Source of the DNA: Raja brachyura | Taxonomy: Eukaryota | Direction: 5' to 3' | NCBI GenBank assembly: GCA_963514005.1 | Contig: OY740807.1 | Location: forward strand, 1,674,001-1,738,000 | DNA length: 64,000 bases | In this document: positions 12,001 to 57,120 of the stretch, in pieces | Numbering within the stretch: position 1 is the first letter of the stretch | Layout of the letters: each line of letters starts with the position of its first letter | Notes under the pieces: model-generated | Database searches by the model: none | What the model was told of the DNA's origin: nothing | What the model saw: only the letters and a program-made list of their open reading frames with translations | Translations under genes and position numbers: made by a program

Positions 12001-13068
12001 TACATCTGGGAGATTGTTTGTGTTCTCCTTAGTGAAGACAGATCCAAAGTACCTATTCAACTGTTCTGCCATTTCATTGTTACCCATAATTATTTCACAC
12101 GTGTCCGCCTTCAAGGGACCCACATTTGACTTTGTGGCTGATCGTCCCTTATCAATAACCCGTGCCCGCCTTCTCCCCATATCCCTTGACACCACTAGCC
12201 CATAGAGCTCTATCTAACTCTCTCTTACATCCATCCTGTGATTTGGCCTCCACTGCCCTCTGTGGCAGGGAATTCCATAAATTCACAACTCTCTGGGTGA
12301 AAACATTTTTTCTCACCTCAGTCTTAAATGACCTCCGCTTTATTCTGAGACTGTGGCCCCTGGTTCTGGACTCGTCCAAGATTGGGAACATTTTTTCTTG
12401 CATCTAGCTTGTCCAGTCCTTTTATAATGTTATATGTTTCTATAAGATTCCCCCTCATCCTTCTTAACTCCAGTGAATACAAGCCTAGTCTTTTCCATCT
12501 TTCCTGATATGACAGTCCCGCGATCCCACGGATCAATCTCGTGAACCTAAGCTGCACTGCCTCAATCACAAGGATGTCCTTCCTCAAATTAGGATACCAA
12601 AACTGTACACAATACTCCAGATGTGGTCTCACCAGAGCCCTATACAACTGCAGAAGAACCTCTTTACTCCTACACTGAAATTCTCTTGTTATGAAGGCCA
12701 CATTCCATTAGCTGTCTTCACTGCCTGCTGTACCTGTAAACCAACTTTCAGTGCAAGGACGCCCAGGTCTCCCTGCACCTCCCCCTTACCTAACCTAACC
12801 CCATTGAGATAATAATCTGCCCCCTTGTTTTTGCCGCCAAAGTGGATAACCTCACATTTATCTATATTATACTGCATCTGTCACACATCTGCCCACTCGC
12901 TCAACCTGTCCAGGTCACCCTGCAACTTCCTAACTTCCTCTTCACAGTTCACACTGCCACCCAGATTTGTTTCATCCGCAAACTTGCTAGTGTTGCTCCT
13001 AATTCCCTCTTCAAATCATTAATATATATGGTAAACAGTTGCGGCCCAACACCGAGCCTTGCGGCACT
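9012..13068 (-). mobile_element. Tandem/nested CR1 LINE fragments of two families ((agaaacat)n and (ataaccat)n tails)
   Basis: RT ORFs 9098..10714, 10715..11161, 11281..12195, 12324..12701. Confidence 0.92.
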
Positions 13069-18063: not shown

Positions 18064-19592
18064 CATACCTGCCAACATTTGGAAATGAAAAATCTTACTC
18101 TGAGTGCACTCGCCCCTTAAGGGTGGGGTCCAGGAGCCCGCCTTAGCTCCCGGATTTTAAGTTTTTTTTTGTAGTTTGCCGATATCATGATATATTCAGA
18201 GCTGCCAGGTTTTGTCAAAGCATTTCAGTATCCTAGTACCTGGAAATCAGTATTTTGCTGCGGATTTTTACGCGGTTCTCTTTTGCTGATTTTTTTTTTT
18301 TAAGCGCATTTTGTATGTGGTGTGTATTTGTAATACGCTTTACTGTGTATTATATGTCATAGCTGCTTTCTTGCACTTGGTAGCTAAGTCATTTGGTAGC
18401 AAGGAAGGAATCTCTCTCTCTCTCCTTTCTACCTCTCTCTCTCCCTCCTTTCTACCTCTCTCTCTCTCCCCCCCCTGGCCTTCTCTCTCACTCCCCCCCA
18501 CTCTCCCTCCTTCCTTCCCCCTCCCTCCCTCTCTCTCTCTCTTTCTCCCTCTCTCCCTCCCAGTCTCTCCCCTGTCCCTCCCTCTCCCTCTCTCCCACCC
18601 CCTNNNNNNNNNNNNNNNNNNNNNNNNNNNNNNNNNNNNNNNNNNNNNNNNNNNNNNNNNNNNNNNNNNNNNNNNNNNNNNNNNNNNNNNNNNNNNNNNN
18701 NNNNNNNNNNNNNNNNNNNNNNNNNNNNNNNNNNNNNNCTCTCTCCCTCCCGCCCCTCTCCTCCCCTCTCACTCTCTCCCCTCCCTACCTATCCCTCCGT
18801 CCCTCGCGCTCTNNNNNNNNNNNNNNNNNNNNNNNNNNNNNNNNNNNNNNNNNNNNNNNNNNNNNNNNNNNNNNNNNNNNNNNNNNNNNNNNNNNNNNNN
18901 NNNNNNNNNNNNNNNNNNNNNNNNNNNNNNNNNNNNNNNNNNNNNNNNNNNNNNNNNNNNNNNNNNNNNNNNNNNNNNNNNNNNNNNNNNNNNNNNNNNN
19001 NNNNNNNNNNNNNNNNNNNNNNNNNNNNNNNNNNNNNNNNNNNNNNNNNNNNNCCCTCTCTCTCCCCCCCATCTCCGCCACCCTCTCACCCCCTCCCTCT
19101 CCCCCTCTCTCCCCCCACCTCTCTCCCTCCCGCCCCCCTCTCTGCCTCCCCCCTCTTTCCTTCTCTCCTTCTCTCCCACCCTCCCTCTCCCTCCCCCTCC
19201 CTCCACACACACAACTACAACACCTACAACAAGACTCTATGCTTTACACTCTGTGCAAACAACAGAGACAAAGTGTTGGGGGCAGCCATCTTCCGCTTCA
19301 GTGGGGGAAGCTGGTCGGTGATTGGCCCCTCGGAAACAGCGTCTGATTGGCTACCGTGTGATCAGCGCATTCTGTGATTGGACACAATGGTCTTGGAGAC
19401 AGCGGCTGATTGGACGGGTATTTTATGGGAAGCCGGTAGCTGATTGGACGCAACCCCCTTAGAGACAGCGGTTGATTGGCCATTGTTTCTCCCTCATTTC
19501 AAAATCGTCCTGTTCAGATTTGTTCAAAAATTGACTTTTTAAACTTATAAATCGGAAGAAATACGATACAATCGGACTAATTGGTAGGTATG
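18064..19592. mobile_element. Non-autonomous DNA transposon with CATACC TIRs and 6-bp TSD (hAT-like)
   Basis: CATACCTGCCAA ... TTGGTAGGTATG, flanked by cattac at 18058-18063 and 19593-19598; internal CT-rich tract with two assembly gaps. Confidence 0.7.
18410..19205 (+). repeat. Polypyrimidine (CT/CCT) low-complexity tract containing two N gaps
   Basis: Seen directly; N runs at about 18604-18738 and 18813-19053. Confidence 0.95.
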
Positions 19593-30175: not shown

Positions 30176-33100
30176 TAACCATATAACCATATAACAATTA
30201 CAGCACGGAAACAGGCCCTCTTGGCCCTTCCAGTCCGTGCTGAACATTTATTTTCCCCTAGTCCCATCTACCTGCACTCAGACCATACCCCTCCATTCCC
30301 TTCCCCTCCATATACCTATCCACTTTACTTTTAAATGTTAAAATCGATCCTGCCTCCACCACTTCTGCTGGAAGATAATTCCACACAGCCACCACTCTCT
30401 GAGTAAAGAAGTTCCCCCTAAACTTCTGTCCCTTAATTCTCATGTCATGCCCTCTTGTTTGAATCTTCCCTACCCTCAATGGGAAAAGCTTATCCACGTC
30501 AACTCTGTCTATCCCTTTCATCATTTTAAAGACCTCAATCAAGTCCCCCCTTAACCTTCTGCGCTCCAAAGAATAAAGACCTAACTTGTTCACCCTTTCT
30601 CTGTAACTTAGTTGCTGGAACCCAGGCAACATTCTAGTAAATCTCCTCTGTACTTTCTCTATTTTGTTGACATCCTTCCTATAATTAGGCGACCAAAATT
30701 GTACACCACACTCCAGAATTGGTTTCACCTTGTACAATTTTAACATTACTTCCCTACTCCGATATTCAATCCTCTGATTTATAAAGGCCAGCACACCAAA
30801 AGCTTTCTTTACCACCCTTTCTACATGCGATTCGACCTTCAGGGAACTATGCAGAGTTATTCCTAGATCCCTCTGTTCCACAGCATTCCTCAATTCCCTA
30901 CCATTTACCATGTACGTCCTATTTTGATTTGTCCTGCCAAGATGTAGCACCTCATACTTATCAGCATGAAACTCCATCTGCCATCTTTCAGCCCACTCTT
31001 CCAAATATCCCAAATCTCCCTGTAGACTTTGAAAATCTACTTCATTATCCACAACACCACCTATCTTAGTATCATCTGCATACTTACTTATCCAATTTTC
31101 CACCCCATTATCCAGATCATTGATGCACATTACAAACAACAGTGGGCCCAACACAGATCCCTGAAGCACGCCACTGGTCACCGGCTTCCAACCTGACAAA
31201 CAGCCATCCCCCATTACTCTCTAGCATCTTCCATTCAGCCACTGTTGAATCCATCTTCAAAAAATTCAAGAAGGTTTGTCAAACATGACCTTCCAGGCAC
31301 AAATCCATGTTGAGTGTTCCTGATCAGACCCTGTTTATCCAGATGCTTATATATATTATCTCTAAGTATCCTTTCCATTAAGTTGCCCACCACTGACGTC
31401 GAACTAACAGGTCTATAATTGCTAGGTTTATTGTTTGAACCCTTTTTAAAAATGGAACAACATGCGCATTATGCCAATCCTCCGGCACTATTCCCGTTTC
31501 TAATGACATTTGAAATATTTCTGTCATAGCCCCTGCTATTTCTACACTGACTTCCTTCAATGTCCTTGGGAATATCCTGTCAGGACCTGGAGACTTATCC
31601 ACTTTTATATTTTTCAAAAGTGTCAGTACTTCCTCCTCTTTGAATCTCATAGTTTCCATAGCTACTCTACTTTTTTTCCCTTACCTCACAGAGTTCAATA
31701 TCTTTCTCCTTGTTGAATACAGAAGAAAAGAAATTGTTCAATATCTCCCCCATCTCTTTTGGCTCTGCAGGTAGCTGTCCATTCTGGCTCTCTGATGGTC
31801 CAATTTTATCCCTCGTTATCCTTTTGCTAATAATATAGCTGTAGAAACCCTTTGGGTTTACTTTCATCTTTCTTGCCAAAGCAACCTCATATCTTCTTTT
31901 AGCTTTTCTAATTTCTTTCTTAAGATTCTTTTTACATTCTTTATACTCCTCTGGCACTTAATTTACTCCGTGCCTCCTATAATTATTGTAGATATCTCTC
32001 TTTTTCGAACCAAGTGTCCAATTTCCCTTGAAAGACATGGCTCTTTCCAAGTTTTACTATTTCCTTTCAACCGAATTGGCATACTGCGCATGTTGTTCCA
32101 TTGCTTAAAAAGGGTTCTAAGAGTAAACCTAGCAATTATAGACCGGTTAGTTTGACTTCAGTGGTGGGCAAATTAATGGAAAAGATACAGAGATAAGATA
32201 TATAAGCATCTGGATAAACAGGGTCTAATTAGGAACAGTCAACATGGATTTATGCCTGGAAGGTCATGTTTGACTAATCTTCTTGAATTTTTTGAAGAGG
32301 TTACTAGGGAAATTGACGAGGGTAAAGCAGTGGATGTTGTCTATATGGACTTCAGTAAGGCCTTTGACAAGGTTCCTCATGGAAGGTTGGTTAAGAAGGT
32401 TCAACTGTTGGGTATAAATGCAGGAATAGCAAGATGGATTCAACAGTGGCTGAATGGGAGAAGCCAGAGGGTAATGGTGGATGGCTGTTTGTCGGGTTGG
32501 AGGCAGGTGACTAGTGGGGTGCCTCAGGGATCTGTGTTGGGTCCTTTGTTGTTTGTCATGTACATCAATAATCTGGATGAAGGGGTGGTAAATTGGATTA
32601 GTAAGTATGCAGATGATACCAAGATAGGGGGTGTTGTGGATAATGAAGAGGATTTCCAAAGTCTACAGAGTGATTTAGGCCAGTTGGAAAAATGGGCTGA
32701 AAGATGGCAGATGGAGTTTAATGCTGATAAATGTGAGGTGCTACACCTTGGCAGGACAAATCAAAATAGGACGTACATGGTAAACGGTAGGGAATTGAAG
32801 AATACAGTTGAACAGAGGGATCTGGGAATAACCGTACATAGTTCTTTGAAGGTGGAATCTCATATAGATAGGGTGGTAAAGAAAGCTTTTGGTATGCTAG
32901 CCTTTATAAATCAGAGCATTGAGTATAGAAGCTGGGATGTAATGTTAAAATTGTACAAGGCATTGGTGAGACCAAATCTGGAGTATGGTGTACAATTTTG
33001 GTCGCCCAATTATAGGAAGGATATCAACAAAATAGAGAGGGTACAGAGGAGATTTACTAGAATGTTGCCTGGGTTTCAACAGCTAAGTTACAGAGATAGG

Positions 33101-34555
33101 TTGAATAAGTTAGGTCTTTATTCTCTGGAGCGCAGAAGGTTAAGGGGGGACTTGATAGAGGTCTTTAAAATGATGAGAGGGATAGACAGAGTTGATGTGG
33201 ACAAGCTTTTCCCTTTGAGAATAGGGAAGATTCAAACAAGAGGACATGACTTTAGAATTAAGGGACATAAGTTTAGGGGTAACATGAGGGGGAACTTATT
33301 TACTCAGAGAGTGGTAGCGGTGTGGAATGAGCTTCCAATGGAAGTGGAGGTGGCAGGTTCGTTGGTATCATTTAAAAATAAATTGGATTGGCATATGGAT
33401 GAGAAGGGTATGGAGGGTTATGGTATGAGTGCAGGCAGGTGGGGCTAAGGGAAAAAAGTTGTTCGGCATGGACTTGAAGGGCCGAGATGGCCTGTTTCCG
33501 TGCTGTAATTGTTATATGGTTATATGGTTAACAGGGACATAAAGATTCTGTATTCTTACAATTTCCCCTTTAAATGTCCTCCATTTCTCTTCTACATCCT
33601 TCCCATAAAACAAAATGTCCCAATTCACTCCTTTTAAATCCTTACACATTCCCTCAAAGTTAGCCTTGCTCCAATCAAAAATCTCAACCCAGGTCCAGTT
33701 CTGACTCTCTCCATAATTATATTACATAGAAACATAGAAAATAGGTGCAGGAGTAGGCCATTCGGCCCTTCGAGCCTGCACCGCCATTCAATGTGATCAT
33801 GGCTGATCATCCAACTCAGTATCCCGTACCTGCCTTCTCTCCATACCCCCTGATCCCTTTAGCCACAAGTGCCACATCTAACGCCCTCTTAAATATAGCC
33901 AATGAACTGGCCTCAACTACCTTCTGTGGCAGAGAATTCCAGAGACTCACCACTCTCTGTGTAAAGAATGTTTTCCTCATTTCGGTCCTAAAGGAATTCC
34001 CCCTTATCCTTAGACTGTGACCCCTTGTTCTGGAACTAATTGAAACTAATATTGAAACTAATATTGAAACTAATGATATTGTAATCACTGGTCCCAAAGT
34101 GCTCACCAACGCATACCTCTGTCACCTGACCTGCCTCATTTCCTAACAGGAGGTCCAGCACTGCCCCTTCTCTGGTCGATACCTCTATGTATTGCTGCAA
34201 AAAACTATCCTGCACACATTTTACAAACTCCAAACCATCCAGCCCATTTACAGAATGTGTTTCCCAGTCTATTTTTGGAAAATTGAAATCTCCCACAATC
34301 ACTACCTTGTGCTTACTACTAATATCTGTTATCTCCTTACATATTTGCTCTTCCAATTCTCGCTCCCCATTTAACAGTCTATAATACACCCCTAAAAGTG
34401 TTGCTACACCGTTCCCACTTCTCAGTTCCACCCAAATAGCCTCCCTAGACGAGCCCTCTAATCTATCCTGCCAAAGCACTGCTGTGATATCTTCTCTGAC
34501 AAGCAATGCAACACCTCCACCCCAGGTCCCTCCAATTCTAGCACACCTGAAGCAA
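30176..34555 (-). mobile_element. Long CR1 nested in the Tc1, itself interrupted by further CR1 insertions
   Basis: ORFs 30258..31214, 31378..31659, 31667..31957, 34036..34506 (APE). Confidence 0.88.
32076..33530 (+). mobile_element. Young 5'-truncated CR1 nested in the opposite-strand CR1
   Basis: Open RT ORF 32252..33448 (YADD); host sequence ttcaaccgaa|acagggacat is interrupted; (tatatggt)n tail. Confidence 0.9.
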
Positions 34556-36875: not shown

Positions 36876-37802
36876 ATGTCAAGCAAGCTGATGCAGTGTG
36901 ATGCTTGCAGTATGTGGGAGGTCAAGGACACTGCTGGTGCCTCTGGATGCTACAAATGTGAGAAGTGCATCCAGGTACAGCTCCTGAAGGACCGTGTTGG
37001 GGAATTGGAAAAACAAGTGGATGACCTCAGGTTCATCCGAGAAACTGAGTCGTTCCTCGACAAGTCCTTCAGTAAGATTGTTACACCCAAGGCACTAGAA
37101 GAGAGAAGGTGGGTGACGGTGAGAAAGGGAGGAAAACATGGAATGCAAAGGTCCCCGGGTGTTGTACCTCTTGTGAACAGGTTCACCCACGTGGAAGCTG
37201 CCGGGACAGAAGACGGTATCTCACTGAGCGGCGGACTGGCTTGCCAAACAAAAAGGGCTGATGAGCCAAAACCAAAGAGGCCAAAGTCGGGCAACGCCAT
37301 TGTAGTTGGAGACTCCATTGTGAGAGGTACGGACAGGGTTTTTTGCGGCAACAGACGGGATTCCAGGATGGTGTGCTGCCTTCCTGGTGCCAGGATCCAG
37401 GATGTTACGGACAGAGTGCAGACAATCCTCAAGGGCGAAGGTGAACAGCCGGAAGTGGTCGTGCATGTTGGCACAAATGATGTTGGAAAGAAGGGGATGA
37501 ATATTTTGCAGCGGGACTTCAGAGAGCTTGGAAAAATGCTAAAAAGCAGGACTTCCAGGGTTGTTATCTCCGGTTTGCTTCCAGTTCCTCGTGCTGGCGA
37601 GAGCAGGAACAGGGAGATACGGGACCTGAATGCGTGGCTGAGGAACTGGTGCAGGGGGCAGGGATTTAGATTCTTAGATCACTGGGATCTGTTTTGGAGT
37701 AAGGGGGAACTGTACAAAAGGGACGGATTGCATCTTAACAGGTGGGGGACCAGCATTCTGGCCGGCAGGTTTGCCACTGCTACACGGATGGTTTTAAACT
37801 GA
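36876..37802 (+). CDS. CR1 ORF1p (Zn-finger, leucine zipper, SGNH/GDSL esterase)
   Basis: CDAC...CEKC, heptad leucines, GDSIVR, HVGTND and DGLH motifs. Confidence 0.9.
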   Translation: MSSKLMQCDACSMWEVKDTAGASGCYKCEKCIQVQLLKDRVGELEKQVDDLRFIRETESFLDKSFSKIVTPKALEERRWVTVRKGGKHGMQRSPGVVPLVNRFTHVEAAGTEDGISLSGGLACQTKRADEPKPKRPKSGNAIVVGDSIVRGTDRVFCGNRRDSRMVCCLPGARIQDVTDRVQTILKGEGEQPEVVVHVGTNDVGKKGMNILQRDFRELGKMLKSRTSRVVISGLLPVPRAGESRNREIRDLNAWLRNWCRGQGFRFLDHWDLFWSKGELYKRDGLHLNRWGTSILAGRFATATRMVLN

Positions 37803-40800
37803 ATAAGGGGGGTGGGGTGTCAAATGGGATAATTGAGAACGGAGTTAAAGGGAAAGAGAGTAAAGGGATGGTTAATGACCCCAGAATTAACGGGAAAGAA
37901 AGCTCACAACGGGATAGGAGAGTATGGCCAAGTGTAATAGGGATCGATGTGAAAGGGGCCACTTGTCAACATAATTGTATAAGGAGTAAGAGTATTGTAA
38001 AAACAAGCCTGAAGGCTTTGTGTCTCAATGCGAGGAGCATTCGTAATAAGGTGGATGAGTTGAAGGTGCAGATAGCGATTAATGACTATGCTATAGTTGG
38101 GATCACGGAGACATGGCTCCAGGATGACCAAGGTTGGGAGCTGAACATCCAGGGATATTCAATATTCAGGAGGGATAGACGAAAAGGAAAAGGAGGTGGG
38201 GTAGCGTTGCTGGTGAGAGAGGAGATTAATGCAATAGAAAGGAAGGACATTAGCGTGGAGGATGTGGAATCGATATGGGTAGAGCTGCGAAACTCTAAGG
38301 GGCAGAAAACGCTAGTGGGAGCTGTGTACAGGCCACCTAACAGTAGTATTGGAGTTGGGGATGGCATCAAACAGGAAATTAGAAATGCGTGCAACAAGGG
38401 TAACACGGTTATAATGTGTGACTTCAATCTGCATGTAGATTGGGTGAATCAAATTGGCAGGGGTGCTGAGGAAGAGGATTTCCTGGAATGTATGCGGGAT
38501 AGTTTTCTCAACCAACATGTGGAGGAACCAACGAGAGAGCAGGCTATTCTAGACTGGGTATTGAGTAATGAGGAAGGGTTAGTTAGCAGTCTTGTTGTGC
38601 GTGGCCCCTTGGGCAAGAGTGACCATAATATGGTTGAGTTCTTCATTAGGATGGAGAGTGACAAAATTAAGTCAGAAACAAGAGTTCTGAACTTGAACAA
38701 AGGTAACTTTGAAGGTATGAGATGTGAATTGGCCAAGATAGACTGGCAGGTGATTCTTAAAGGGTTGACAGTGGATGTGCAATGGAAGGTATTTAAAGAC
38801 TGCATGGATGAAGTACAAAAGTTGTTCATACCAGTTTGGCAAAAGAATAAATCAGGGAAGGTGGTGCATCCATGGATAACAAGGGAAATCAGGGATAGTA
38901 TAAAAACAAAAGATGAGGCATACAAATTTGCCAGAAAAAGCAGCCTACCGGAGGACTGGGAGAAATTCAGAATGCAGCAGAGGAGGACAAAGGGCTTAAT
39001 TAGGAAAGGGAAAATAGATTATGAAAGGAAACTGGCAGGGAACATAAAAACTGACTGCAAGAGTTTTTATAGATATGTGAAGAGAAAGAGACTAGTTAAA
39101 ACAAATGTTGGTCCCTTGCAGTCAGAAACAGGTGAATTGATCATGGGGAACAAGGACATGGCAGACCAATTGAATAACTACTTTGGTTCTGTCTTCACTA
39201 AGGAAGACATAAATAATCTGCCGGAAATAGCAGTGGAACTGGGGTCAAATAAGATGGAGGAACTGAGTAAAATCCAGGTTCGCCGGGAGGTGGTGTTGGG
39301 TAAATTGAACGGATTGAAGGCCGATAAATCCCCAGGGCCAGATAGTCTGCATCCCAGAGTACTCAAGGAGGTAGCCACAGAAATAGTGGATGCATTAGTG
39401 ATAATTTTTCAAAATTCCTTAGATTCTGGAGTAGTTTCTGAGGATTGGAGGGTAGCTAATGTAACCCCACTTTTTAAAAAAGCAGGGAGAGAGAAAGCGG
39501 AGAATTACAGACCAGTTAGTCTAACATCGGTAGTGGGGAAACTGCTAGAGTCAGTTATTAAAGATGGGATAGCAGCGCATTTGGAAAGTGGTGAAATCAT
39601 TGGACAAAGTCAGCATGGATTTACGAAAGGTAAATCATGTCTGACAAATCTGATAGAATTTTTTGAGGATGTAACTAGTAGAGTGGATAAGGGAGAACCA
39701 GTGGATGTGTTATATCTAGACTTTCAGAAGGCTTTCGACAAGGTCCTGCATAAGAGATTAGCATACAAACTTAAAGCCCACGTTATTGGGGGTTCAGTAT
39801 TGATGTGGATAGAGAACTGGCTAGCAGACAGGAGGCAAAGGGTAGGAGTAAACGGGTCCTTTTCAGAATGGCAGGCAGTGACTAGTGGGGTGCCGCAAGG
39901 CTCAGTGCTGGGACCCCAGCTATTTACAATATATATTAATGATTTGGACGAGGGAATTCAATGCAACATCTCCAAATTTGCAGATGATACCAAGCTGGGG
40001 GGTATAGTTAGGTGTGAGGAGGATGCTTGGAGGCTGCAGGGTGATTTGGATAGGCTGAGTGAATGGGTAGATGCATGGCAGATGCAGTATAATGTGGATA
40101 AATGTGAGGTTATCCACTTTGGTGGCAAAAACATGAGGGTAGACTATTATCTGAATGGTGGCAGATTAGGAAAGGGGGAGATGCAACGAGAACTGGGTGT
40201 CATGGTACACCAGTCATTGAAAGTAGGCATGCAGTTGCAGCAGGCAGTGAAGAAAGCAAATGGTATGTTAGCATTCATAGCGAAAGGATTTGAGTATAGG
40301 AGCAGGGAGGTTCTACTGCAGTTGCACAGGGTTTTGGTGAGGCCACACCTGGAGTATTGCGTACAGTTTTGGTCTCCAAATCTGAGGAAAGACATCCTTG
40401 CCATAGAGGGGGTACAGAGAAGATTCACCAGACTGATTCCTGGGATGTCAGGACTTTCATATGAGGAAAGATTGGATAGACTCGGCTTGTACTCGCTGGA
40501 ATTTAGAAGATTGAGGGGGGATCTTATAGAAACTTACAAAATTCTTAAGGGGTTGGACAAGCTAGATGCTGGAAGATTGTTCCCGATGTTGGGGGAGTCC
40601 AGAACAAGGGGTCACAGTCGAAGGATAAGGGGGAATTCCTTTAGGACCGAAATGAGGAAAACATTCTTTGCACAGAGAGTCGTGAGTCTCTGGAATTCTC
40701 TGCCACAGAAGGTAGTTGAGGCCAGTTCATTGGCTATATTTAAGAGGGCGTTAGATGTGGCACTTGTGGCTAAAGGGATCAGGGGGTATGGAGAGAAGGC

Positions 40801-40816
40801 AGGTACGGGATACTGA
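37742..40816 (+). CDS. CR1 ORF2p (AP endonuclease + reverse transcriptase)
   Basis: Uninterrupted 1024-codon frame: NARS, ITETW, YRPP, DFN, SDH; RT motifs [25 protein letters not shown]. The true start codon is uncertain. Confidence 0.93.
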   Translation: MGDQHSGRQVCHCYTDGFKLNKGGGVSNGIIENGVKGKESKGMVNDPRINGKESSQRDRRVWPSVIGIDVKGATCQHNCIRSKSIVKTSLKALCLNARSIRNKVDELKVQIAINDYAIVGITETWLQDDQGWELNIQGYSIFRRDRRKGKGGGVALLVREEINAIERKDISVEDVESIWVELRNSKGQKTLVGAVYRPPNSSIGVGDGIKQEIRNACNKGNTVIMCDFNLHVDWVNQIGRGAEEEDFLECMRDSFLNQHVEEPTREQAILDWVLSNEEGLVSSLVVRGPLGKSDHNMVEFFIRMESDKIKSETRVLNLNKGNFEGMRCELAKIDWQVILKGLTVDVQWKVFKDCMDEVQKLFIPVWQKNKSGKVVHPWITREIRDSIKTKDEAYKFARKSSLPEDWEKFRMQQRRTKGLIRKGKIDYERKLAGNIKTDCKSFYRYVKRKRLVKTNVGPLQSETGELIMGNKDMADQLNNYFGSVFTKEDINNLPEIAVELGSNKMEELSKIQVRREVVLGKLNGLKADKSPGPDSLHPRVLKEVATEIVDALVIIFQNSLDSGVVSEDWRVANVTPLFKKAGREKAENYRPVSLTSVVGKLLESVIKDGIAAHLESGEIIGQSQHGFTKGKSCLTNLIEFFEDVTSRVDKGEPVDVLYLDFQKAFDKVLHKRLAYKLKAHVIGGSVLMWIENWLADRRQRVGVNGSFSEWQAVTSGVPQGSVLGPQLFTIYINDLDEGIQCNISKFADDTKLGGIVRCEEDAWRLQGDLDRLSEWVDAWQMQYNVDKCEVIHFGGKNMRVDYYLNGGRLGKGEMQRELGVMVHQSLKVGMQLQQAVKKANGMLAFIAKGFEYRSREVLLQLHRVLVRPHLEYCVQFWSPNLRKDILAIEGVQRRFTRLIPGMSGLSYEERLDRLGLYSLEFRRLRGDLIETYKILKGLDKLDAGRLFPMLGESRTRGHSRRIRGNSFRTEMRKTFFAQRVVSLWNSLPQKVVEASSLAIFKRALDVALVAKGIRGYGEKAGTGY

Positions 40817-44469: not shown

Positions 44470-46475
44470 TCATATAATCATATAACAATTACAGCACGGA
44501 AACAGGCCTTCTCATAGAAACATAGAAACATAGAAAAATAGGTGCAGGAGTAGGCCATTCGGCCCTTCGAGCCTGCACCGCCATTCAATGTGATCATGGC
44601 TGATCATCCAACTTAGTATCCCGTAACTGCCTTCTCTCCATACCCCCTGATCCCTTTAGCCACAAGTGCCACATCTAACGCCCTCTTAAATATAGCCAAT
44701 GAACTGGCCTCAACCACCTTCTGTGGCAGAGAATTCCAGAGACTCACCACTCTCTGTGCAAAGAATGTTTTCCTCATCTCGGTCCTAAAGAAAGTCCCCC
44801 TTATCCTTAGACTGTGACCCCTTGTTCTGGACTCCCCCAACATCGGGAACAATCTTCCAGCATCTAGCTTGTCCAACCCCTTAAGAATTTTGTACGTTTC
44901 TATAAGATCCCCTCTCAATCTTCTAAATTCCATCGAGTAGAAGCCGAGTCTATCCAGTCTTTCCTCATATGAAAGTCCTGACATCCCAGGAATCAGTCTG
45001 GTGAGTCTTCTCTGTACCCCCTCAATGGCAAGACTGTCTTTCCTCAGATTTGGTGACCAAAACTGTACGCAATACTCCAGGCGTGGCCTCACCAAAACCC
45101 TGTACAACTGCAGTAGAACCTCCCTGCTCCTATACTCAAATCCTTTCGCTATGAATGCAAACATACCATTTGCTTTCTGCACTGCCTGCTGGACCTGCAT
45201 GCCTACTTTCAATGACTGGTGTACCATGACACCCAGGTCTCGTTGCATCTCCCCTTTTCCTAATCTGCCACCATTCAGATAATAGTCTACCCTCATGTTT
45301 TTGCCACCAAAGTGGATAACCTCACATTTATCCACATTATACTGCATCTGCCATGCATCTGCCCATTCACTCAGCCTATCCAAATCACCCTGCAGCCTCC
45401 AAGCATCCTCCTCACACCTAACTATACCCCCCAGCTTGGTATCATCTGCAAATTTGGAGATGTTGCATTGAATTCCCTCGTCCAAATCATTAATATATAT
45501 TGTATATAGCTGGGGTCCCAGCACTGAGCCTTGCGGTACCCCACTAGTCACTGCCTGCCATTCTGAAAAGTACCCGTTTACTCCTACCCTTTGCTTCCTG
45601 TCTGCTTGCCAGTTCTCTATCCACATCAATACTGAACACCGAATACCGTGTGCTTTAAGTTTGTATGCTAATCTCTTATGCGGGACCTTGTCGAAAGCCT
45701 TCTGAAAGTCTAGATATAACACATCCACTGGTTCTCCCTTAACCACTCTACTAGTTATATCCTCGAAAAATTCTATCAGATTTGTCAGACATGATTTACC
45801 TTTCGTAAATCCATGCTGACTTTGTCCAATGATTTCACCACTTTCCAAATGCGCTGCTATCCCATTTTTAATAACTGACTCTAGCAGTTTCCCCACTACC
45901 GATGTTTGGCTAACTGGTCTGTAATTCCCCGCTTTCTCTCTCCCTCCCTTTTTTTAACTGTGGGGTTACATTAGCTACCCTCCAATCCTCAGGAACTACT
46001 CCAGAATCTAAGGAATTTTGAAAACATTCTAAGGATTTCCAGTCCGTGCCGACCATTTATTTTCCCCTAGTCCCATCTACCTGCACTCAGACCATACCCC
46101 TCCATTCCCTTCCCGTCCATATACCTATCCACTTTACTTTTAAATGTTAAAATCGATCCCGCCTCCTCCACTTCTGCTGGAAGATCATTCCACACAGCCA
46201 CCACTATCTGAGTAAAGAAGTTCCCCCTCATGTTACCCCTAAACTTATGTCTCTTAATTTTCATATCATGCCCTCTTGTTTGAATCTTCCATACCCTCAA
46301 TGGGAAAAGCTTATCCACGTCAACTCTGTCTATCCCTTTAATCATTTTAAAGACCTCAATCAAGTCCCCCCTTAACCTTCTGCGCTCCAAAGAATAAAGA
46401 CCTAACTTGTTCAACCTCTCTCTGTAACTTAGTTGCTGGAACCCAGGCAACATTCTAGTAAATCTCCTCTGTACA
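44470..46475 (-). mobile_element. Nested CR1 fragments (two families)
   Basis: ORFs 44613..45896 and 46067..46600; the host tail ggccttctc is split by the second element. Confidence 0.9.
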
Positions 46476-47099
46476 TACATTTTTAATGTACATACATTTT
46501 GTATTGTGGGGGGGGGGGGGGGAAACTTTTTTTTAAATCTCTTTCCTCGACGGAGATGCGACTTCTTCAACGTATCTCGTCTGCACAACGGCTTTAACAC
46601 CGCGGAGCTGGGAGAAAAGGAGGAAATTAGGGATAAGTTATTTGACTTCCATCACAGTGGGGAATGTGAGGTCGCCGAAAAAACAAGATGGACTTGCTGC
46701 CTGCACTGGTGAGGACTGGGAGGCAATGCCGTGAGCTCAGTGATCTCGGTGTTTTGCAGGGACATGGCTCCGTGAGGACATCCCGGAGTCTGCGAGTGTG
46801 GACGGGACGGTTCGGGCGGACAGGGACTGCAGAGAGAGTGACTGCGGTCGGTACAACTCTGGTCACATCACGGTGAAGGAGCGCGTGTGTGGCCCGGACA
46901 TTGAACTGATGGCTTTGGGTCTCCGCTTATGCTGTGGCCCTGGGGATTCTCACACACCGCTGTGGTGGCTGTTTAAGTCGATGTGTAATTTGTATGTGGT
47001 TATGTATCTTGTTGTTTTTTTTTAATGATTGTTGGCAATCAAATTCCTGGTATGTTTACATACTTGGCTAATAAATTAATTTCAATAAGAATTAAACGA

Positions 47100-47304
47100 C
47101 ATTGAATTTGCCGTCAGCAGATTCTAAAGCGCCGGAAATCAGTCTCCGCCCACACAGGTTTCCTGGCCCCTCCCACTCATTACATTCCCGTTAATAAAAA
47201 CAACCAGAGGCTCTGGTTTCCAGACACTGGACCCCGAGCGTCTCCCGGACTTTGCTGTACAACACGAGTGGGTCTGAAGATTTGGTGTTCGCCTGTCCGG
47301 AAGA
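47100..47304 (+). promoter_or_regulatory. Putative IgL proximal promoter
   Basis: Non-repetitive sequence upstream of the leader ATG with a TATA-like TTAATAAAAA (47191-47200), an ETS-like CCGGAAAT (47132-47139) and a GC box; no canonical ATTTGCAT octamer seen. Confidence 0.45.
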
Positions 47305-47353
47305 ATGGCCCCAGCGCTGCACCTCCTGTGGCCTCTGCTGCTGCTCCCAGCAG
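47305..47353 (+). CDS. IgL leader exon (MAPALHLLWPLLLLPA-G)
   Basis: ATG in AGAATGG context, hydrophobic 16-aa peptide, phase-1 donor CAG|GTGAGA; classic split Ig leader. Confidence 0.88.
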
Positions 47354-49845
47354 GTGAGACTCGGGTTGGTTCACGACTGATTATCTGCAACGAGGCTCGT
47401 TAAAATCTCCACCATCGTCGGTGCTCTACGCGTGTCTAGCCTTCTGTGGGCTCCAGATCACCCAGTCGTTTCATCTGTCCATAAGTGATGGGCCATTCAA
47501 TCTCTATCTGATCTATCTCTTTCTCCTAACCCCATTCTCCTGCCTTCTCCCCATAACCCGTCACCCGTACGAAACACGGATCTATCTATCTCAGCCTTAG
47601 CTTGGCCTAAACCGCCGTCTGTGGCAATTAATTCACCTCCCTTGGACTAAAGAAACTCTTCATCATCTCATTCTAAAGGAATGTACATTATTTCTGAGGC
47701 TTTGATTAAGGTTTTCATTGTGTTTTGTTGAAGGTCTCCTGGCGATCCCAGTCCTGAATCAGACCCCAACGTCCGGACCTGTCTCCGCGGCACAAACCAT
47801 CCGCTTAGAGTGTCGGATGCAGAACGGAAATGTTGCAAGTTACCGTGTAAATTGGTATCGACAGCGTCCCGGGGAGAGACCAGAGTGGGTGATAAGGCAT
47901 GACACGGATAATGATATATTCCGTGGCAGTGGGATCACAGACCGGTTCCAACCGTCCAGAGATACCTCCGCCAACAGCTACATCCTGACCATCGGCACCC
48001 TGGAGCCCAGAGACGCCGCCGTCTACTACTGTGCAGTGTGGGAAAGCAACGTGGGATACATCTTCAGCCCTGGGAGTATCCTGGATATAAAGAGTAAGTG
48101 ACTCCCTCGTTCTGTTCCCATGAATCCCCTTTGCAGTCGTTCTCATTCCCCAGTCCGGGAACGCTCCGGGAAAACTTGCTCTGTCTCTACTCGGAGCGGG
48201 AGGCCATTCTGCCCATCGGGTCCGCGCCGTACGTCAGCGGTCGGGAGAGTATTCCCGCCTGCGGGGAACGTTAGCCCGCGGGGATTCCTGCATCGTTAAC
48301 ACAAGTCGCAGTTTGCGACAATCAAACGCGTTAATGTTGGGGAAACAAGGAAGACAATTTGCAGGCATTCTGATGAATGACATTGAGGGGAATACTGTGC
48401 AGCGGGTTGGGCAAGTCGGTTAGAGAGTGTAGCGGGAAAGGACGTGTTGGTGCGGGCTCGGGGTGTAATCCGGGATGAACCGGTCGCTTCCTCGTCTCTT
48501 CACCTCTCAATGGTTTGCGGAACCGCGCTGCGTCCCGCCGCTCCCCTTGCGTCACTTGACAGGGAGTGTTGGATATCCGGAGGCCTCTCCGGTACCGGTA
48601 CTTCCCGCCATAACTCCTTAAAGTGGGTGCGGCACATTGGCTCAATGGTAGATATGTTGCCTCACTGCGCCAGATTCCCCGGTTCGAGCCTGACCTCGGG
48701 TGCTGTCTGTGTGGGGTTTGCAAGTTCTCCCTGTGACCCCCCTGGGATTCCTCCCGCTGCTCCGGTTGCCCCGAGTGTACGGGGAGTGGGTGAGAAGCGG
48801 GATATCATAGAACTAGTGTGAACGGGTGATACATGGTCAGTGTGGACTCGGTGGGCCGAAGGGCCAGTTTCCATGCTGTGTCTCCTAAAATAGCTACATT
48901 CGCAAATTCACATTCAAGCGAATTCCAGAGCTGGGGAATTATTGAACCCCGCAATGAAGTCGTCTCGACAGAGCGACGTAAAGCCGAGCGGCGCCAGGTG
49001 GAGGGACGGGGCCGGGGTGATGTTACTCAAGTGGGTTTAGAGCTCTCGGCCTGGTGTTGGCTGCAAGGCGACAGCTGCGATTAACCTGGGCCAATCTTCA
49101 TTAGCCGGCTTAGACCGGCTGGGTTCAATAGCCGCGTCCTTTTCCTCGACTTTCACGAATTGTTCGCGTCATCGACGGTCTTTTAGTTTTAGTTCTAGTT
49201 TTAGAGACAGCCCGAAAACAGGCCCTTCGGCCACCGAGTCCACACCGACCAAAGATCCCCGCAAACGAACACTACCCTACAAACACTGGGGACTAAACGT
49301 ACAAACTCCGTACAGACATGCACCTATATTTAGGATCCGACCCGGCTCTCTGGCGCTGTAAGACAGTTGCTCCAGCGCTGCACCACCGCGCCGCCCAGTC
49401 ACTGACACTTTCCGTGGCCGAGTTCGTTTCTCTCGCGTTGGGGTCAGTGTGTGGCGCTGCCGACGGTCTCCATCAACTAATAATGTTTCTCTTCTCCTCC
49501 GCCTCTCCACACACAGGTAGCGAGTCTCGGAAGCCCTCACTTCTCCTGCTCCCTCCGTCTCCGGATGAAACTGGCACGGGCTCGGCCACACTCAGCTGCC
49601 TGGTGAGCGGCTTTAAGCCGGGCTTCGTGGCGCTGCGCTGGGCCGTGGACGGCGTGGAGACGGAGAGCGGGGTGACGTCGGGCGCCGTGTCCCCGGACGC
49701 CGAACAGACGTACAGGCTGAGCAGTTACCTGCGGGTCCCCGCCGCCGCATGGGACAAGGGCTCCAGCTATTCCTGCAGCGTCGGACATAGCTCGCTCAGC
49801 TCGCCTCTGCGACACACCGTCTCGTCGTCCACCTGCGCGAACTGA
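47305..49845 (+). CDS. Immunoglobulin light chain, cartilaginous-fish sigma-cart (type I/NS5) class, germline-joined VJ; join(47305..47353,47734..48093,49517..49845), 245 aa
   Basis: Three exons joined by phase-1 GT-AG introns (CAG|GTGAGA at 47354, TTGTTGAAG| ending 47733, A|GTAAGT at 48094, ACACACAG| ending 49516) give 49+360+329=738 nt in one open frame: signal peptide, V domain (C...WYRQ...DAAVYYC), J (FSPGSILDIK), C1 domain (ATLSCLV...W...YSCSVGH) and a Cys third from the C-terminus (STCAN*). The V framework (IPVLNQTP...C.MQNGNV.SY...WYRQRPGE.P...DRF.PSRDTS.NS.ILTI) matches shark/skate sigma-cart light chains as I recall them. Confidence 0.93.
47734..48093 (+). CDS. IgL fused V-J exon (pre-rearranged), CDR3 AVWESNVGYI
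   Basis: Within ORF 47718..48101; both V-domain cysteines, WYRQ and YYC are present, followed directly by J-like YIFSPGSILDIKS and a GTAAGT donor; no heptamer/nonamer between V and J. Confidence 0.95.
48624..48890 (+). mobile_element. HE1-like tRNA SINE in the IgL J-C intron
   Basis: A box TGGCTCAATGG, B box GGTTCGAGCC, central SINE domain, CR1-like tail. Confidence 0.75.
49181..49397 (-). mobile_element. Antisense HE1-like SINE in the IgL J-C intron
   Basis: Reverse-complement of the same SINE family, with a (tttag)n tail. Confidence 0.7.
49517..49845 (+). CDS. IgL constant (C1-set) exon
   Basis: Within ORF 49318..49845: KPSLLLLPPSPDE...ATLSCLVSGFKPG...WAVDG...YRLSSYLRVP...W...YSCSVGHSSLSSPLRHTVSSSTCAN; polypyrimidine tract and CAG acceptor at 49514-49516. 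Confidence 0.95.
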
Positions 49846-50111: not shown

Positions 50112-50117
50112 AATAAA
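50112..50117 (+). terminator. Probable IgL polyadenylation signal AATAAA
   Basis: First AATAAA about 270 nt after the C-exon stop, followed by GT-rich sequence. Confidence 0.6.
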
Positions 50118-54739: not shown

Positions 54740-57120
54740 GAATAATTTCAGAAGATTAGTCAAGCATGATTTCCCTTTCATAAATCCATGTTGACTTGGA
54801 CAAATCCTTTTACTGCTATCCAAATGCCAGTTTAAACTCCTGCTGCAACTTACACCCACTTCCGGGCTACACTTTGTGGGTCTGTAAATAACACCAATTA
54901 GCGTATTCTTGCCTTTACAATTCCTCAACTCAAACCACAGTGACTCTACCTCATCAGTCCTTATGTCTTCCTTCACAAGAGACTGAATTCCATCCCTCAC
55001 CAGCAGAGCAACCCCCCCTCCTCTGCCCACCTGCCTGTCCTTTCTATGGGAGGTATAACCCTGATTATTAAGTTCCCAGGCCCGATCCTCCTGCAGCCAC
55101 GTCTCAGTAATCACCACAATGTGATATCAACCAACCTCTAACTGAGCCTCAAGCTCATCTACTTTTCTTCTTATACTTCGCGCATTCATATACCACATAA
55201 CCATATAACAATTACAGCACGGAAACAGGCCTTCTCGGCCCTTCCAGTCTGTGCCGACCATTCATTTCCCCCTAGCCCCATCTACCTGCACTCAGACCAT
55301 ACCCCTCCATTCCCTTCCCGTCCATATACCTATCCATTTTACTTTTAAATGTTAAAATCGATCCTGCCTCCACCAATTCTGCTGGAACATCATTCCACAC
55401 AGCCACCACTCTCTGAGTAAAGAAGTTCCCCCTCATGTTACCCCTAAACTTCTGTCCCTTAATTCTCATGTCATGCCCTCTTGTTTGAATCTTCCCTACC
55501 CTCAATGGGAAAAGCTTATCCATGTCAACTCTGTCTATCCCTTTCATCATTTTAAAGACCTCAATCAACTCCCCCCTTAACCTTCTGCGCTCCAAAGAAT
55601 AAAGACCTACCTTGTTCAACCTTTCTCTGTAACTTAGTTGCTGGAACCCAGGCAACATTCTAGTAAATCTCCTCTGTACTCTCTCTATTTTGTTGACATC
55701 CTTCCTATAATTAGGCAACCAAAATTGTACACCATACTCCAGAATTGGTCTTACCAATGCCTTGTACAATTTTAACATTACTTCCCTACTCCTATATTCA
55801 ATGCTCTGATTTATAAAGGCCAGCACACCAAAAGCTTTTTTTACCACCCTATCTACATGCGATTCCACCTTCAGGGAACTATGCACAGTTATTCCTAGAT
55901 CCCTCTGTTCCACAGCATTCCTCAATTCCCTACCATTTACCATGTATGTCCTATTTTGATTTGTCCTGCCAAGATGTAGCACCTCACACTTATCAGCATT
56001 AAACTCCTTCTGCCATCTTTCAGCCCACTCTTCCAAATGGCCCAAATCTCTCTGTAGACTTTGAAAATCTACTTCATTATCCACAGCATCACCTATCTTA
56101 GTATCATCTGCATACTTACTTATCCAATTTTCCACCCCATCATCTAGATCATTGATGTACATGACAAACAACAGTGGACCCAACACAGATCCCTGAGGCA
56201 CCCCACTGGTCACCGGCTTCCAACCTGACAAACAGCCATCCATCATTATTCTCTGGCATCTCCCATTCAGCCACTGTTGAATCCATCTTGCTACTCCGCC
56301 ATTAACACCCAAAGATTGAACCTTCTTAACCAACCTTCCATGGGGAACCTTGTCAAAGGCTTTACTGAAATCCATATAGACAACATCCATTGCTTTACTG
56401 TCATCAATTTCCCTAGTAACCTCTTCAAAAAATTCAAGAAGGTTTGTCAAACATGACCATCCAGGCACAAATCCATGTTGACTGTTCTTGATCAGACCCT
56501 GGTTATCCAGATGCTTATATATATTATCTCTAAGTATCCTTTCCATTAATTTGCCCACCACTGACGTCAAACTAACAGGTCTATAATTGCTAGGTTTATT
56601 CTTTGAACCCTTTTTAAACAATGGAACAACATGCGCAGTACACCAATCCTCCGGCACTATTCCCATTTCTAATGACCATCCTCGAATCCCCTGTCCGTAC
56701 CTCTCACAATGGAGTCTCCAACTACAATGGCATTGCCTGACGTTGGCCTTTTTGGTTTTGACTCAACAGCCCTTTTTGCTTCGCAAGCCAGTCCCCTGCT
56801 CAGGGTTTTAACGTCTTCTGTCCCGACAGCTTCTAAGTGGGTGAACCTGTTCACAAAAGGTACAACACCCGGGGATGTTTGCATTCCAAGTTTCCCTCTC
56901 TTTCTCACCGTCACTCACTTTCTCCCTCCCTTAGGTGTAACAATCTCACTGTAGGACTTGTCGGGGAATGACTCCGTTTCTCGGACGAACCAGAGGTCAT
57001 GCACTTGATTCTCCAGTTCCCCAACTTCAGGAGCTGTACCTGCATTCACTTCTCATATTTGTAGCAGCCAGAGGCAATAGCAGTGTCCTTGACCTCCCAC
57101 ATACTGCATCTCCCACATAC
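54740..57120 (-). mobile_element. CR1 fragments (RT, APE and ORF1 pieces)
   Basis: ORF 55272..56666 (YADD); ORF1-like 56669..56914 (GDSIVR). Confidence 0.9.

What the first reader, a model, noticed from the sequence alone, without database searches (positions are those of the whole stretch)
47305..49845. Intact germline-joined (pre-rearranged VJ) sigma-cart Ig light-chain gene: an inherited antibody chain
Seen: V runs in frame into J (YYC-AVWESNVGYI-FSPG) with no RSS or intervening DNA, leader and J-C introns are retained, splice sites are canonical and the 245-aa frame is open. Retained introns rule out a processed cDNA. Established: cartilaginous fish organise Ig genes as V-J-C clusters, and skate type I light-chain clusters are germline-joined, attributed to RAG activity in germ cells, so the phenomenon itself is known. 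Inference: this copy encodes a fixed CDR3, could be expressed without recombination, and may act as an innate-like or early-ontogeny light chain diversified only by hypermutation.
Basis: partly seen in the sequence, partly recalled or inferred. Interest (0 to 1): 0.85.

Follow-up and report, generated by a model that had tools for sequence, protein, structure and literature searches.

The report
Germline-joined skate type I light-chain gene
This is an intact antibody light-chain gene of a skate whose V and J parts are already fused in inherited DNA, a real but long-known peculiarity of skates, so this copy is one more ordinary member of that family.

Summary
Leader exon (47305-47353), fused V-J exon (47734-48093) and C exon (49517-49845) have canonical splice sites and phases, and sum to 245 codons plus stop. 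No RSS lies at the V/J border.

The isotype holds. The C exon is 91% identical to 'type I immunoglobulin light chain [Leucoraja erinacea]', and by my count 95% to an Amblyraja radiata model and 87% to the sawfish protein that a 2025 paper labels IgLS2. Type I = NS5 = sigma-cart = sigma-2 (PMC5192425).

The assembly-artefact rival fails. Public DNA contigs from two other organism labels run straight through the V-J junction, at the same depth as flanking unique DNA.

The phenomenon is in print. Anderson et al. 1995 found at least 89 type I clusters in skate, all germline-joined, expressed and possibly hypermutated. The scan's first readers noted four more joined clusters in this genome (not checked here).

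Variants between this copy and the read contigs concentrate in the CDRs. Expression of this particular copy stayed untested because no RNA run was listed.

Verdict: a new member of a known kind, of low interest. The 'innate-like, early-ontogeny' idea is untested speculation.

The parts
47192..47198 (+). TATA-like TAATAAA about 110 nt upstream of the ATG; candidate promoter element (weak)
   Evidence: Motif scan. No perfect octamer lies upstream; the nearest one-mismatch ATTTGTAT is at 46988. Function was not tested.
47305..47353 (+). Leader exon, MAPALHLLWPLLLLPA + 1 nt, donor GTGAGA
   Evidence: The same 16 leader residues occur in the Amblyraja radiata model P0065.
47354..47733 (+). Leader intron (380 nt, phase 1) holding a high-copy interspersed repeat at about 47450-47650
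   Evidence: Contig depth there is 2x10^5 to 2.6x10^6, against 8-90 in unique parts (table 2).
47734..48093 (+). Fused V-J exon (360 nt): FR1-CDR1-FR2-CDR2-FR3-CDR3-J in one open frame, no RSS
   Evidence: (V-set 5.1e-15). Contigs X3 record 11 (47692-48710) and X1 record 3 (47692-48091) bridge the junction.
47814..47852 (+). CDR1 by my own marking (RMQNGNVASYRVN, between Cys and WYRQ)
   Evidence: Variant positions 47844, 47845 and 47850, all replacement.
47895..47921 (+). CDR2 by my own marking (RHDTDNDIF)
   Evidence: Variant positions 47896, 47898, 47903, 47918 and 47920; 4 of 5 are replacement.
48033..48062 (+). CDR3 including the inherited V-J joint (AVWESNVGYI, 10 codons)
   Evidence: Of 12 skate relatives, 11 have 10 codons here and 1 has 9. 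Variants 48046 (S>N) and 48061 (I>T).
48063..48093 (+). J-derived FR4, FSPGSILDIK + 1 nt; FSPG in place of the usual FGxG
   Evidence: FSPG is shared by all 12 skate relatives of the P0001 cluster. That FGxG is the canonical motif is recalled, not taken from a call.
48094..49516 (+). J-C intron (1423 nt, phase 1) with high-copy repeats at about 48650-48950 and 49150-49450
   Evidence: table 2. No Rfam family matches.
49517..49845 (+). C exon (108 codons + stop), C1-set domain, C-terminal Cys in ...STCAN, no transmembrane tail
   Evidence: C1-set 3.9e-21; 91% to skate type I; 103 of 108 to P0065.
50112..50117 (+). AATAAA polyadenylation signal 267 nt after the stop
   Evidence: motif only.

Best explanation
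This is one cluster (leader - VJ - C, 2.5 kb) of the multi-cluster type I (sigma-cart / sigma-2) immunoglobulin light-chain family of a skate. Its V and J segments were fused in the germline of an ancestor and have been inherited as a single exon ever since.

How it works:
- The gene needs no V(J) recombination. Transcription and two ordinary splices give a complete 245-residue light chain with a fixed, germline-encoded CDR3.
- Diversity for this isotype comes from many slightly different clusters, whose CDRs diverge by germline substitution under selection, and possibly from somatic hypermutation.

What is shown and what is inferred:
- Shown here: the gene structure, the isotype, the joined state in independent DNA data sets, and CDR-biased variation.
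- Taken from the literature: expression and possible hypermutation of such genes in little skate.
- Inferred: that this particular copy is expressed, and that the original fusion was made by RAG in germ cells.
For: Structure:
- Exons, phases and splice sites.
- V-set and C1-set domains.
- No RSS in the window.

Isotype:
- The best C-exon hit is 'type I immunoglobulin light chain [Leucoraja erinacea]' at 91%.
- All 64 hits are cartilaginous-fish light chains of this group.
- By my count, P0065 (Amblyraja radiata) matches 104 of 119 V-J residues and 103 of 108 C residues.
- P0002 is XP_051901911.1, listed as Pristis IgLS2 in PMC12227049.
- The same CDR3 length and the same FSPG J motif occur in all 12 skate relatives, one of which is a codon shorter.

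Germline state:
- X3 contig record 11 spans 47692-48710, and X1 record 3 spans 47692-48091.
- Their depths (81.2 and 31.6) equal those of flanking unique contigs (81-94 and 31-41).
- Introns are contiguous with exons, so these are DNA forms.
- The two runs carry different organism labels and studies, and neither is the window's own sample. All four runs share differences from the window.

Selection:
- In X3 record 11, 13 of 21 differences lie in the 360-nt exon and 8 in the other 659 nt (Fisher p = 0.018).
- 10 of 14 variable exon positions lie in CDRs, which make up 27% of the exon (binomial p = 0.0006).
- 14 of 15 variants change the amino acid.
- The part of the C exon covered by X3 record 13 shows 0 differences.

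Literature:
- Anderson 1995 (PMC2192082, abstract).

Locus: four more joined clusters were noted in the same genome (first-reader notes that I did not check).
Against: - There is no RNA evidence for this copy. None of the 22 runs listed is on record as RNA, and none of the 15 joints listed skips an intron (237 more joints were not shown).
- The tissues of the DNA runs are unknown to me, so 'non-lymphoid' rests on depth. It is not taken from a label.
- X6 has a hole at 47965-48052, and table 8 lists no bridging piece for X7. So only 2 of the 4 runs are shown to bridge.
- No perfect octamer lies upstream of the gene.
- The contigs may be orthologues, alleles or very close paralogues, so the variant pattern is not a clean population sample.
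- The replacement excess alone is not significant (p = 0.08).
- J has FSPGS where the canonical motif is FGxGT. That is family-wide, but it is a departure.
Confidence: 0.9

Rival explanations
1. The joined V-J is a somatic B-cell rearrangement captured by the assembly, and the germline locus is split.
For: The window alone cannot distinguish the two. The tissues of the runs laid are not known to me.
Against: - Contigs from two runs with different organism labels and studies bridge the junction at the depth of flanking unique DNA.
- Among the 24 loose ends listed, none lies at the V/J border (1285 more were not shown).
- The same joint length and J motif recur in 12 relatives from two skate genera.
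- Anderson 1995 found no unjoined type I gene in skate (abstract).
Confidence: 0.02
2. The gene is joined in the germline but is a silent or decaying copy, that is, a pseudogene in the making that contributes no protein.
For: - No RNA run was available.
- No perfect octamer lies upstream.
- J departs from the usual motif: FSPGS.
- The gene sits in LINE-rich DNA.
Against: - The frame is open across three exons, with canonical splice sites.
- Both domain cysteine pairs, the FR2 Trp and the C-terminal Cys are present.
- The C exon is almost invariant across runs while the CDRs vary, which is the pattern of a gene under selection.
- FSPG is present in the GenBank skate type I proteins.
- FSPG is also present in seven unnamed full-length family proteins on contigs of about 1-1.3 kb. 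Those contigs are too short to hold the introns, so they are spliced transcripts of the family.
Confidence: 0.07
3. This is the first reader's functional idea: the copy is a specialised innate-like or early-ontogeny light chain, distinct from the adult adaptive repertoire.
For: In nurse shark the germline-joined sigma-2 gene is expressed early and pairs with the neonatal IgM1gj heavy chain (PMC5192425 passages). [quoted passage not shown]
Against: - In skates all type I genes are joined, and cDNAs match them (Anderson 1995 abstract). The joined state therefore does not single out a special subset.
- CDR-focused variation fits a diversified antigen-binding family better than a single fixed innate specificity.
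Confidence: 0.15

Closest known systems
Little skate (Raja/Leucoraja erinacea) type I light-chain clusters (Anderson et al. 1995, J Exp Med 182:109; GenBank proteins AAA87170.1 and AAA87171.1)
   Same: - The same L-VJ-C cluster form with V and J fused in the germline.
- The same 10-codon CDR3 frame (AVWE..VG..) and the same unusual FSPG J motif.
- C exon 91-93% identical and V-J exon 81-86% identical.
- CDR-biased replacement variation, as in that paper's abstract.
   Different: - This is a different copy and probably a different species. No identical protein was found.
- J ends ...SILDIK, where most of those sequences have TILEIN.
- In the V-only tree this copy is sister to the starred clade (100/96) of the 12 other FSPG sequences.
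Amblyraja radiata RefSeq model XP_032902325.1 (P0065)
   Same: It is the closest single protein: 104 of 119 V-J residues, 103 of 108 C residues, and an identical 16-residue leader.
   Different: It differs at 15 V-J positions, and its CDR3 and J read AVWESGVGYF-FSPGTILEIN. I did not see its DNA, so I did not check its joined state.
Horn shark (Heterodontus francisci) type I light chain (CAA33375.1, P0051)
   Same: The same isotype, with the C exon 68-69% identical. It falls in the sister clade in the V tree.
   Different: Its clusters are split (V-RSS, RSS-J) and rearrange somatically, according to PMC5192425 and PMC2193156 passages. Its J motif is FGPG.
Nurse shark germline-joined NS4 (kappa) and NS5 (sigma-2) genes (Lee et al. 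2000, PMC2193156; PMC5192425)
   Same: V-J fused in germline DNA within a cluster-type locus. That work is the basis for proposing RAG-like joining in germ cells.
   Different: In nurse shark, joined and split genes coexist, and the joined ones are expressed mainly early in life. In skates the whole type I family is joined. NS4 is a different isotype.

Membership tests
Ig light chain, type I / NS5 / sigma-cart / sigma-2 | One V-set and one C1-set domain, a secreted-type C terminus with a Cys for the H-L bond, and no transmembrane exon | tested here: met
   Pfam V-set 5.1e-15 and C1-set 3.9e-21. The C exon ends ...STCAN followed by a stop.
Ig light chain, type I / NS5 / sigma-cart / sigma-2 | The closest relatives are proteins named or used as this isotype | tested here: met
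   The best hit is 'type I immunoglobulin light chain [Leucoraja erinacea]' at 91% over C. P0002 is XP_051901911.1, which is 'Prpe IgLS2' in PMC12227049. The horn shark type I protein is at 68-69%. Other isotypes did not appear among the 64 hits, so I built no tree against kappa, lambda or sigma.
Ig light chain, type I / NS5 / sigma-cart / sigma-2 | Cluster organisation: leader, V(J) and C within a few kb, repeated at many loci | tested here: met
   L-VJ-C spans 2541 nt. There is only one cluster in this 64-kb window. First readers noted four more in the same genome (not checked by me).
Germline-joined Ig genes of cartilaginous fish | V and J contiguous and in frame, with no RSS or spacer DNA | tested here: met
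Germline-joined Ig genes of cartilaginous fish | The joined form is the inherited form, present in non-lymphoid or all cells | tested here: met
   Contigs from 2 of the 4 runs laid bridge the joint at the depth of flanking unique DNA. These two runs carry different organism labels and come from different studies. The other 2 runs are uninformative at the joint in the listed tables. Tissue labels were not seen, so the test rests on depth and independence and not on tissue.
Germline-joined Ig genes of cartilaginous fish | Leader and J-C introns retained, so it is not a retro-copy | tested here: met
   Introns of 380 and 1423 nt with GT..AG ends.
Germline-joined Ig genes of cartilaginous fish | Transcribed and spliced without rearrangement | not tested
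   No RNA run was listed for this stretch, and no intron-skipping joint appears among the 15 listed. There is family-level support only: Anderson 1995 (abstract), and seven full-length relatives on contigs of about 1-1.3 kb.
Processed (retrotransposed) Ig pseudogene | Introns absent, poly(A) tract, target-site duplications | tested here: not met
   Both introns are present.
T-cell receptor or non-rearranging IgSF gene | Best homology to TCR chains or to VJ-type IgSF receptors, with a transmembrane region | tested here: not met
   All 64 hits are light chains, and the C exon ends in a stop with no transmembrane segment.

The most novel reading that the evidence does not exclude
The V-J joint itself may be very old.

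Skates (this gene: AVWESNVGYI-FSPG) and stingrays or devil rays (for example TVWESNIGWV-YGPG and RVWESGVGYF-YGPG) share a 10-codon CDR3 with the same WES-x-(V/I)-G core. This could mean that a single germ-cell joining event in a batoid ancestor, more than 200 million years ago, founded all these clusters. The junction codons would then have evolved ever since as ordinary, selected germline sequence.

A clade uniting the skate rows with the stingray YGPG rows is not rejected (AU p = 0.336), but it is not supported either. CDR3 length changed at least 5 times on the tree. I could not see the ray DNA, so whether those genes are joined is not shown.
Probability: 0.35. Interest if true: 0.4.

Novelty: new member of a known kind. 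Interest (0 to 1): 0.15.

Why it matters
It matters little as a discovery. Germline-joined type I light chains in skates have been in the literature since 1994-95 and appear in every review of fish immunoglobulins.

The copy is useful as annotation. It is an intact, precisely delimited sigma-2 cluster in a chromosome-scale context, and it is a slightly divergent lineage with an ancestral-looking J end.

Together with the other clusters noted in this genome, it could feed a full census of the locus. That census could ask:
- How many clusters are there, and are all of them joined?
- How are they spaced among the LINEs?
- Do the CDRs evolve under diversifying selection?

Comparing junction nucleotides across batoid orders could date the joining event. 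Lee et al. 2000 called that point 'probable, but not conclusive'.

Tried and rejected
- **Paralogues and RSS in the window.** tblastn with the V-J and C exon peptides found only the gene itself. RSS patterns gave no hit, and loose heptamers gave none at the border.
- **PDB sequence searches** returned only generic antibody chains. They were useless for isotype.
- **Two ancient joined lineages?** I asked whether the 8- and 10-codon CDR3 classes mark two lineages shared by skates and rays.
  - The V-only tree used 60 rows: 59 of the 74 proteins kept, plus the window. 15 proteins were dropped for lacking a recognisable junction motif, and P0064 and P0076 were dropped as C-only.
  - The tree mixes both lengths inside the stingray YGPG clade.
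  - The AU test rejects one clade of all 22 batoid 10-codon rows (p = 0.000145). Length class changes at least 5 times.
  - I named the groups after seeing the tree, which weakens the p-values. The idea is dropped.
- **Skate + YGPG as one clade:** p = 0.336, inconclusive.
- **Octamer promoter motif:** no perfect match upstream.
- **The search of earlier findings by place near the window:** nothing.
- **Anderson 1995:** only the abstract and the reference list are held. I could not compare this copy with that paper's sequence groups or figures.
- **Literature on joined light chains in stingrays:** one search ('light chain', 'germline-joined', 'stingray') found one paper. Its single use of the term concerns a ratfish heavy chain. 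I make no wider claim of absence from print.
Full report
**Observation**

- A 49-nt leader exon (47305-47353, donor GTGAGA) is followed by a 380-nt intron.
- Next comes a 360-nt exon (47734-48093). It opens after TTGAAG and runs without interruption from framework 1 through ...AVYYCAVWESNVGYIFSPGSILDIK to an A|GTAAGT donor.
- A 1423-nt intron follows, then a 329-nt C exon (49517-49845) ending in TGA.
- The exon lengths sum to 738 nt, which is 245 codons plus the stop, with both introns in phase 1.

I derived the length by arithmetic.

Pfam calls the V-J exon V-set (5.1e-15) and the C exon C1-set (3.9e-21). No heptamer-spacer-nonamer RSS (nonamer with up to 2 mismatches) exists anywhere in the 64-kb window. 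No heptamer lies at the V/J border. tblastn with both exon peptides found no second V or C in the window.

**What it is**

I searched with the C exon alone. It was carried in the natural ORF 49318-49842, and only residues 68-175 were scored. This returned 64 proteins, all cartilaginous-fish light chains.
- The best is 'type I immunoglobulin light chain [Leucoraja erinacea]' at 91%.
- Next come Pristis (88%), Amblyraja (87%) and the stingrays and devil rays (75-84%).
- Further out are Squalus (74%) and horn shark type I (68-69%).

The 90% cluster of the best hit holds the two GenBank skate type I proteins (AAA87170.1, AAA87171.1), RefSeq models of Amblyraja radiata and L. erinacea, and eight unnamed proteins.

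By my own count the closest protein is the A. radiata model P0065: 104 of 119 V-J residues, 103 of 108 C residues, and an identical leader. No protein is identical to this copy.

P0002 is XP_051901911.1. PMC12227049 lists that accession in its methods as the sawfish 'IgLS2' (passages). PMC5192425 (section 5.1, passages) equates type I, NS5, sigma-cart and sigma-2. The isotype assignment therefore holds. The current name is sigma-2.

I did not place the gene in a tree against kappa, lambda and sigma, because none of those appeared among the hits. Identity of 91-95% to named members makes such a tree unnecessary.

**Germline or somatic**

- The look-up of sequencing runs listed 22 runs. Of these, 20 hold part of the stretch, spread over 9 studies and organism labels A-G. 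None is on record as RNA.
- I laid four runs from four samples and studies: X1 and X6 (organism A), X3 (organism B) and X7 (organism C). All are contigs.
- The contigs carry introns contiguous with exons, so they are the DNA form.
- X3 record 11 (1019 nt) covers 47692-48710, which is the whole V-J exon plus 617 nt of the J-C intron, with 21 differences and no gap.
- X1 record 3 (400 nt) covers 47692-48091 with 6 differences.
- Their depths (81.2 and 31.6) match the flanking unique contigs of the same runs (81-94 and 31-41). The joined form is therefore present at the copy number of the surrounding genome. It is not a minority B-cell clone.
- X6 has a hole at 47965-48052 at low depth. For X7, table 8 lists no bridging piece. 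Those two runs say nothing at the joint in what was shown.
- None of the 24 listed loose ends lies at the V/J border, though 1285 more were not shown.
- All four runs share differences from the window (for example at 47189, 47199, 47241, 47256, 47799, 47898 and 47903). None is therefore the window's own sample, and the support is independent.

I did not see tissue labels. The argument rests on depth and independence.

**Pattern of variation**
- Within X3 record 11, 13 of the 21 differences fall in the 360-nt exon and 8 in the other 659 nt (Fisher p = 0.018).
- X3 record 13 covers the first 147 nt of the C exon with 0 differences.
- Table 3 lists 15 variant alleles at 14 positions in the V-J exon. 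Of these, 14 change the amino acid.
- 10 of the 14 positions lie in my marked CDRs, which are 27% of the exon (binomial p = 0.0006).
- The replacement excess alone is not significant (p = 0.08).
- Caveats: the variants come from four related data sets and are not independent, and 49 further rows of that table were not shown.

The picture agrees with the abstract of Anderson et al. 1995, which reports differences preferentially in the CDRs, with replacement substitutions exceeding neutral ones.

**Comparison with what is known**

- **Anderson et al. 1995** (PMC2192082; only the abstract and references are held) reported at least 89 type I clusters in Raja erinacea. They found no type I gene that was not germline-joined, expression of the joined genes, and possible somatic mutation.
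- **Lee et al. 2000** (PMC2193156, passages) showed RAG-like joining in germ cells for nurse shark NS4. They noted that the skate type I joining probably happened after the divergence of Batoidea. For this gene the RAG origin is thus an inference by analogy.

All 12 skate relatives share the FSPG motif in J. 11 of them have a 10-codon CDR3 like this copy, and one has 9. This is what one expects if one joined ancestor was duplicated many times.

Seven unnamed full-length relatives sit on contigs of about 1-1.3 kb. Contigs of that size cannot hold the two introns, so they are spliced transcripts of the family. They are not this copy.

The scan's first readers noted four more joined L-VJ-C clusters in the same genome, at about -146, +417, +593 and +674 kb. 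I did not check them.

The window around the gene is LINE-rich. 8 of the 10 largest ORFs carry a reverse-transcriptase domain, and one more is a LINE ORF1-type esterase.

**Evolutionary side question**

Batoid relatives show 8-codon and 10-codon CDR3s, and the stingray 10-codon forms resemble this gene's joint.
- I built a V-only tree that excludes CDR3 and J. It has 60 rows: 59 of the 74 proteins kept, plus the window. 15 proteins were dropped for lacking a junction motif, and two C-only proteins were also dropped.
- The tree gives a starred batoid clade (99/89) and a skate clade (92/84).
- This copy is sister to a starred clade (100/96) of the other 12 FSPG sequences.
- The stingray YGPG clade mixes both CDR3 lengths.
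- One clade of all batoid 10-codon rows is rejected (AU p = 0.000145).
- A skate + YGPG clade is not rejected (p = 0.336).
- The length class changes at least 5 times.

CDR3 length is therefore not a lineage marker. The age of the joint remains open, and I could not see the ray DNA.

**Function**

The most likely mechanism is simple. The gene is transcribed and spliced into a complete light chain without recombination, and its CDR3 is fixed in the germline. Repertoire breadth for this isotype comes from the number of clusters and their germline CDR divergence, with hypermutation as a possible somatic layer.

In skates the whole isotype is joined, so the joined state does not mark out a special subset. 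I give that reading 0.15.

A silent copy is possible (0.07), because no RNA was available and no perfect octamer lies upstream. The intact frame and the selection-like pattern argue against it.

**Verdict**

The feature is a further member of a family described thirty years ago. Interest is low (0.15).

The N runs at 18604-19053 were left alone.

Noticed in passing
window 47450-47650, 48650-48950, 49150-49450: Three stretches inside the two introns have summed contig depths of 10^4 to 2.6x10^6 in all four runs, against 8-90 in unique parts. They are very high-copy interspersed repeats (SINE-like by eye). No Rfam family matches.
   Followed up: partly
window 36876-40816 (+), also 9098-10714 (-), 55272-56666 (-), 44613-45896 (-), 32252-33448 (+), 30258-31214 (-), 11281-12195 (-), 3537-4370 (-): The window is LINE-rich. 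One long element has an ORF1 with a GDSL-esterase domain followed by a 1024-codon ORF with endonuclease and reverse-transcriptase domains. Seven further ORFs carry RT fragments. They are described only.
   Followed up: partly
window 48063-48074: The J motif is FSPG in place of the usual FGxG. This Gly-to-Ser change is shared by all 12 skate relatives, whereas sawfish, stingrays, electric ray and sharks keep FG.G or YG.G. That FGxG is canonical is recalled, not from a call.
   Followed up: partly
window 47844-48092 in run X7: X7 shows two forms at several V-J positions (for example depth 7.1 and 12.6 out of 19.7, and 7.5 and 13 out of 20.5). These could be two alleles or two near-identical clusters in that sample (table 3).
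   Followed up: no
window 47886: Runs X6 and X3 read CGG (Arg) where the window has TGG (Trp), in framework 2 (...RPEWVI...). This is a radical replacement outside the CDRs.
   Followed up: no
window 48208, 49002-49006, 49502: Length differences in the J-C intron between runs: 26 nt left out in X6, 6-nt insertions in X6, X3 and X7, and a CT insertion in X3 and X7 just before the C-exon acceptor tract (table 4).
   Followed up: no
window 18604-18738 and 18813-19053: Two N runs (376 N in all).
   Followed up: no
proteins P0042, P0043, P0047, P0048, P0050 (horn shark models): Five of the 11 horn shark models among the hits are over-long (255-299 aa) and lack a recognisable YYC...FGxG junction, whereas most batoid models are 243-246 aa with a clean junction. 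This is what automatic gene models would look like on split versus joined clusters, but I did not see the DNA.
   Followed up: no
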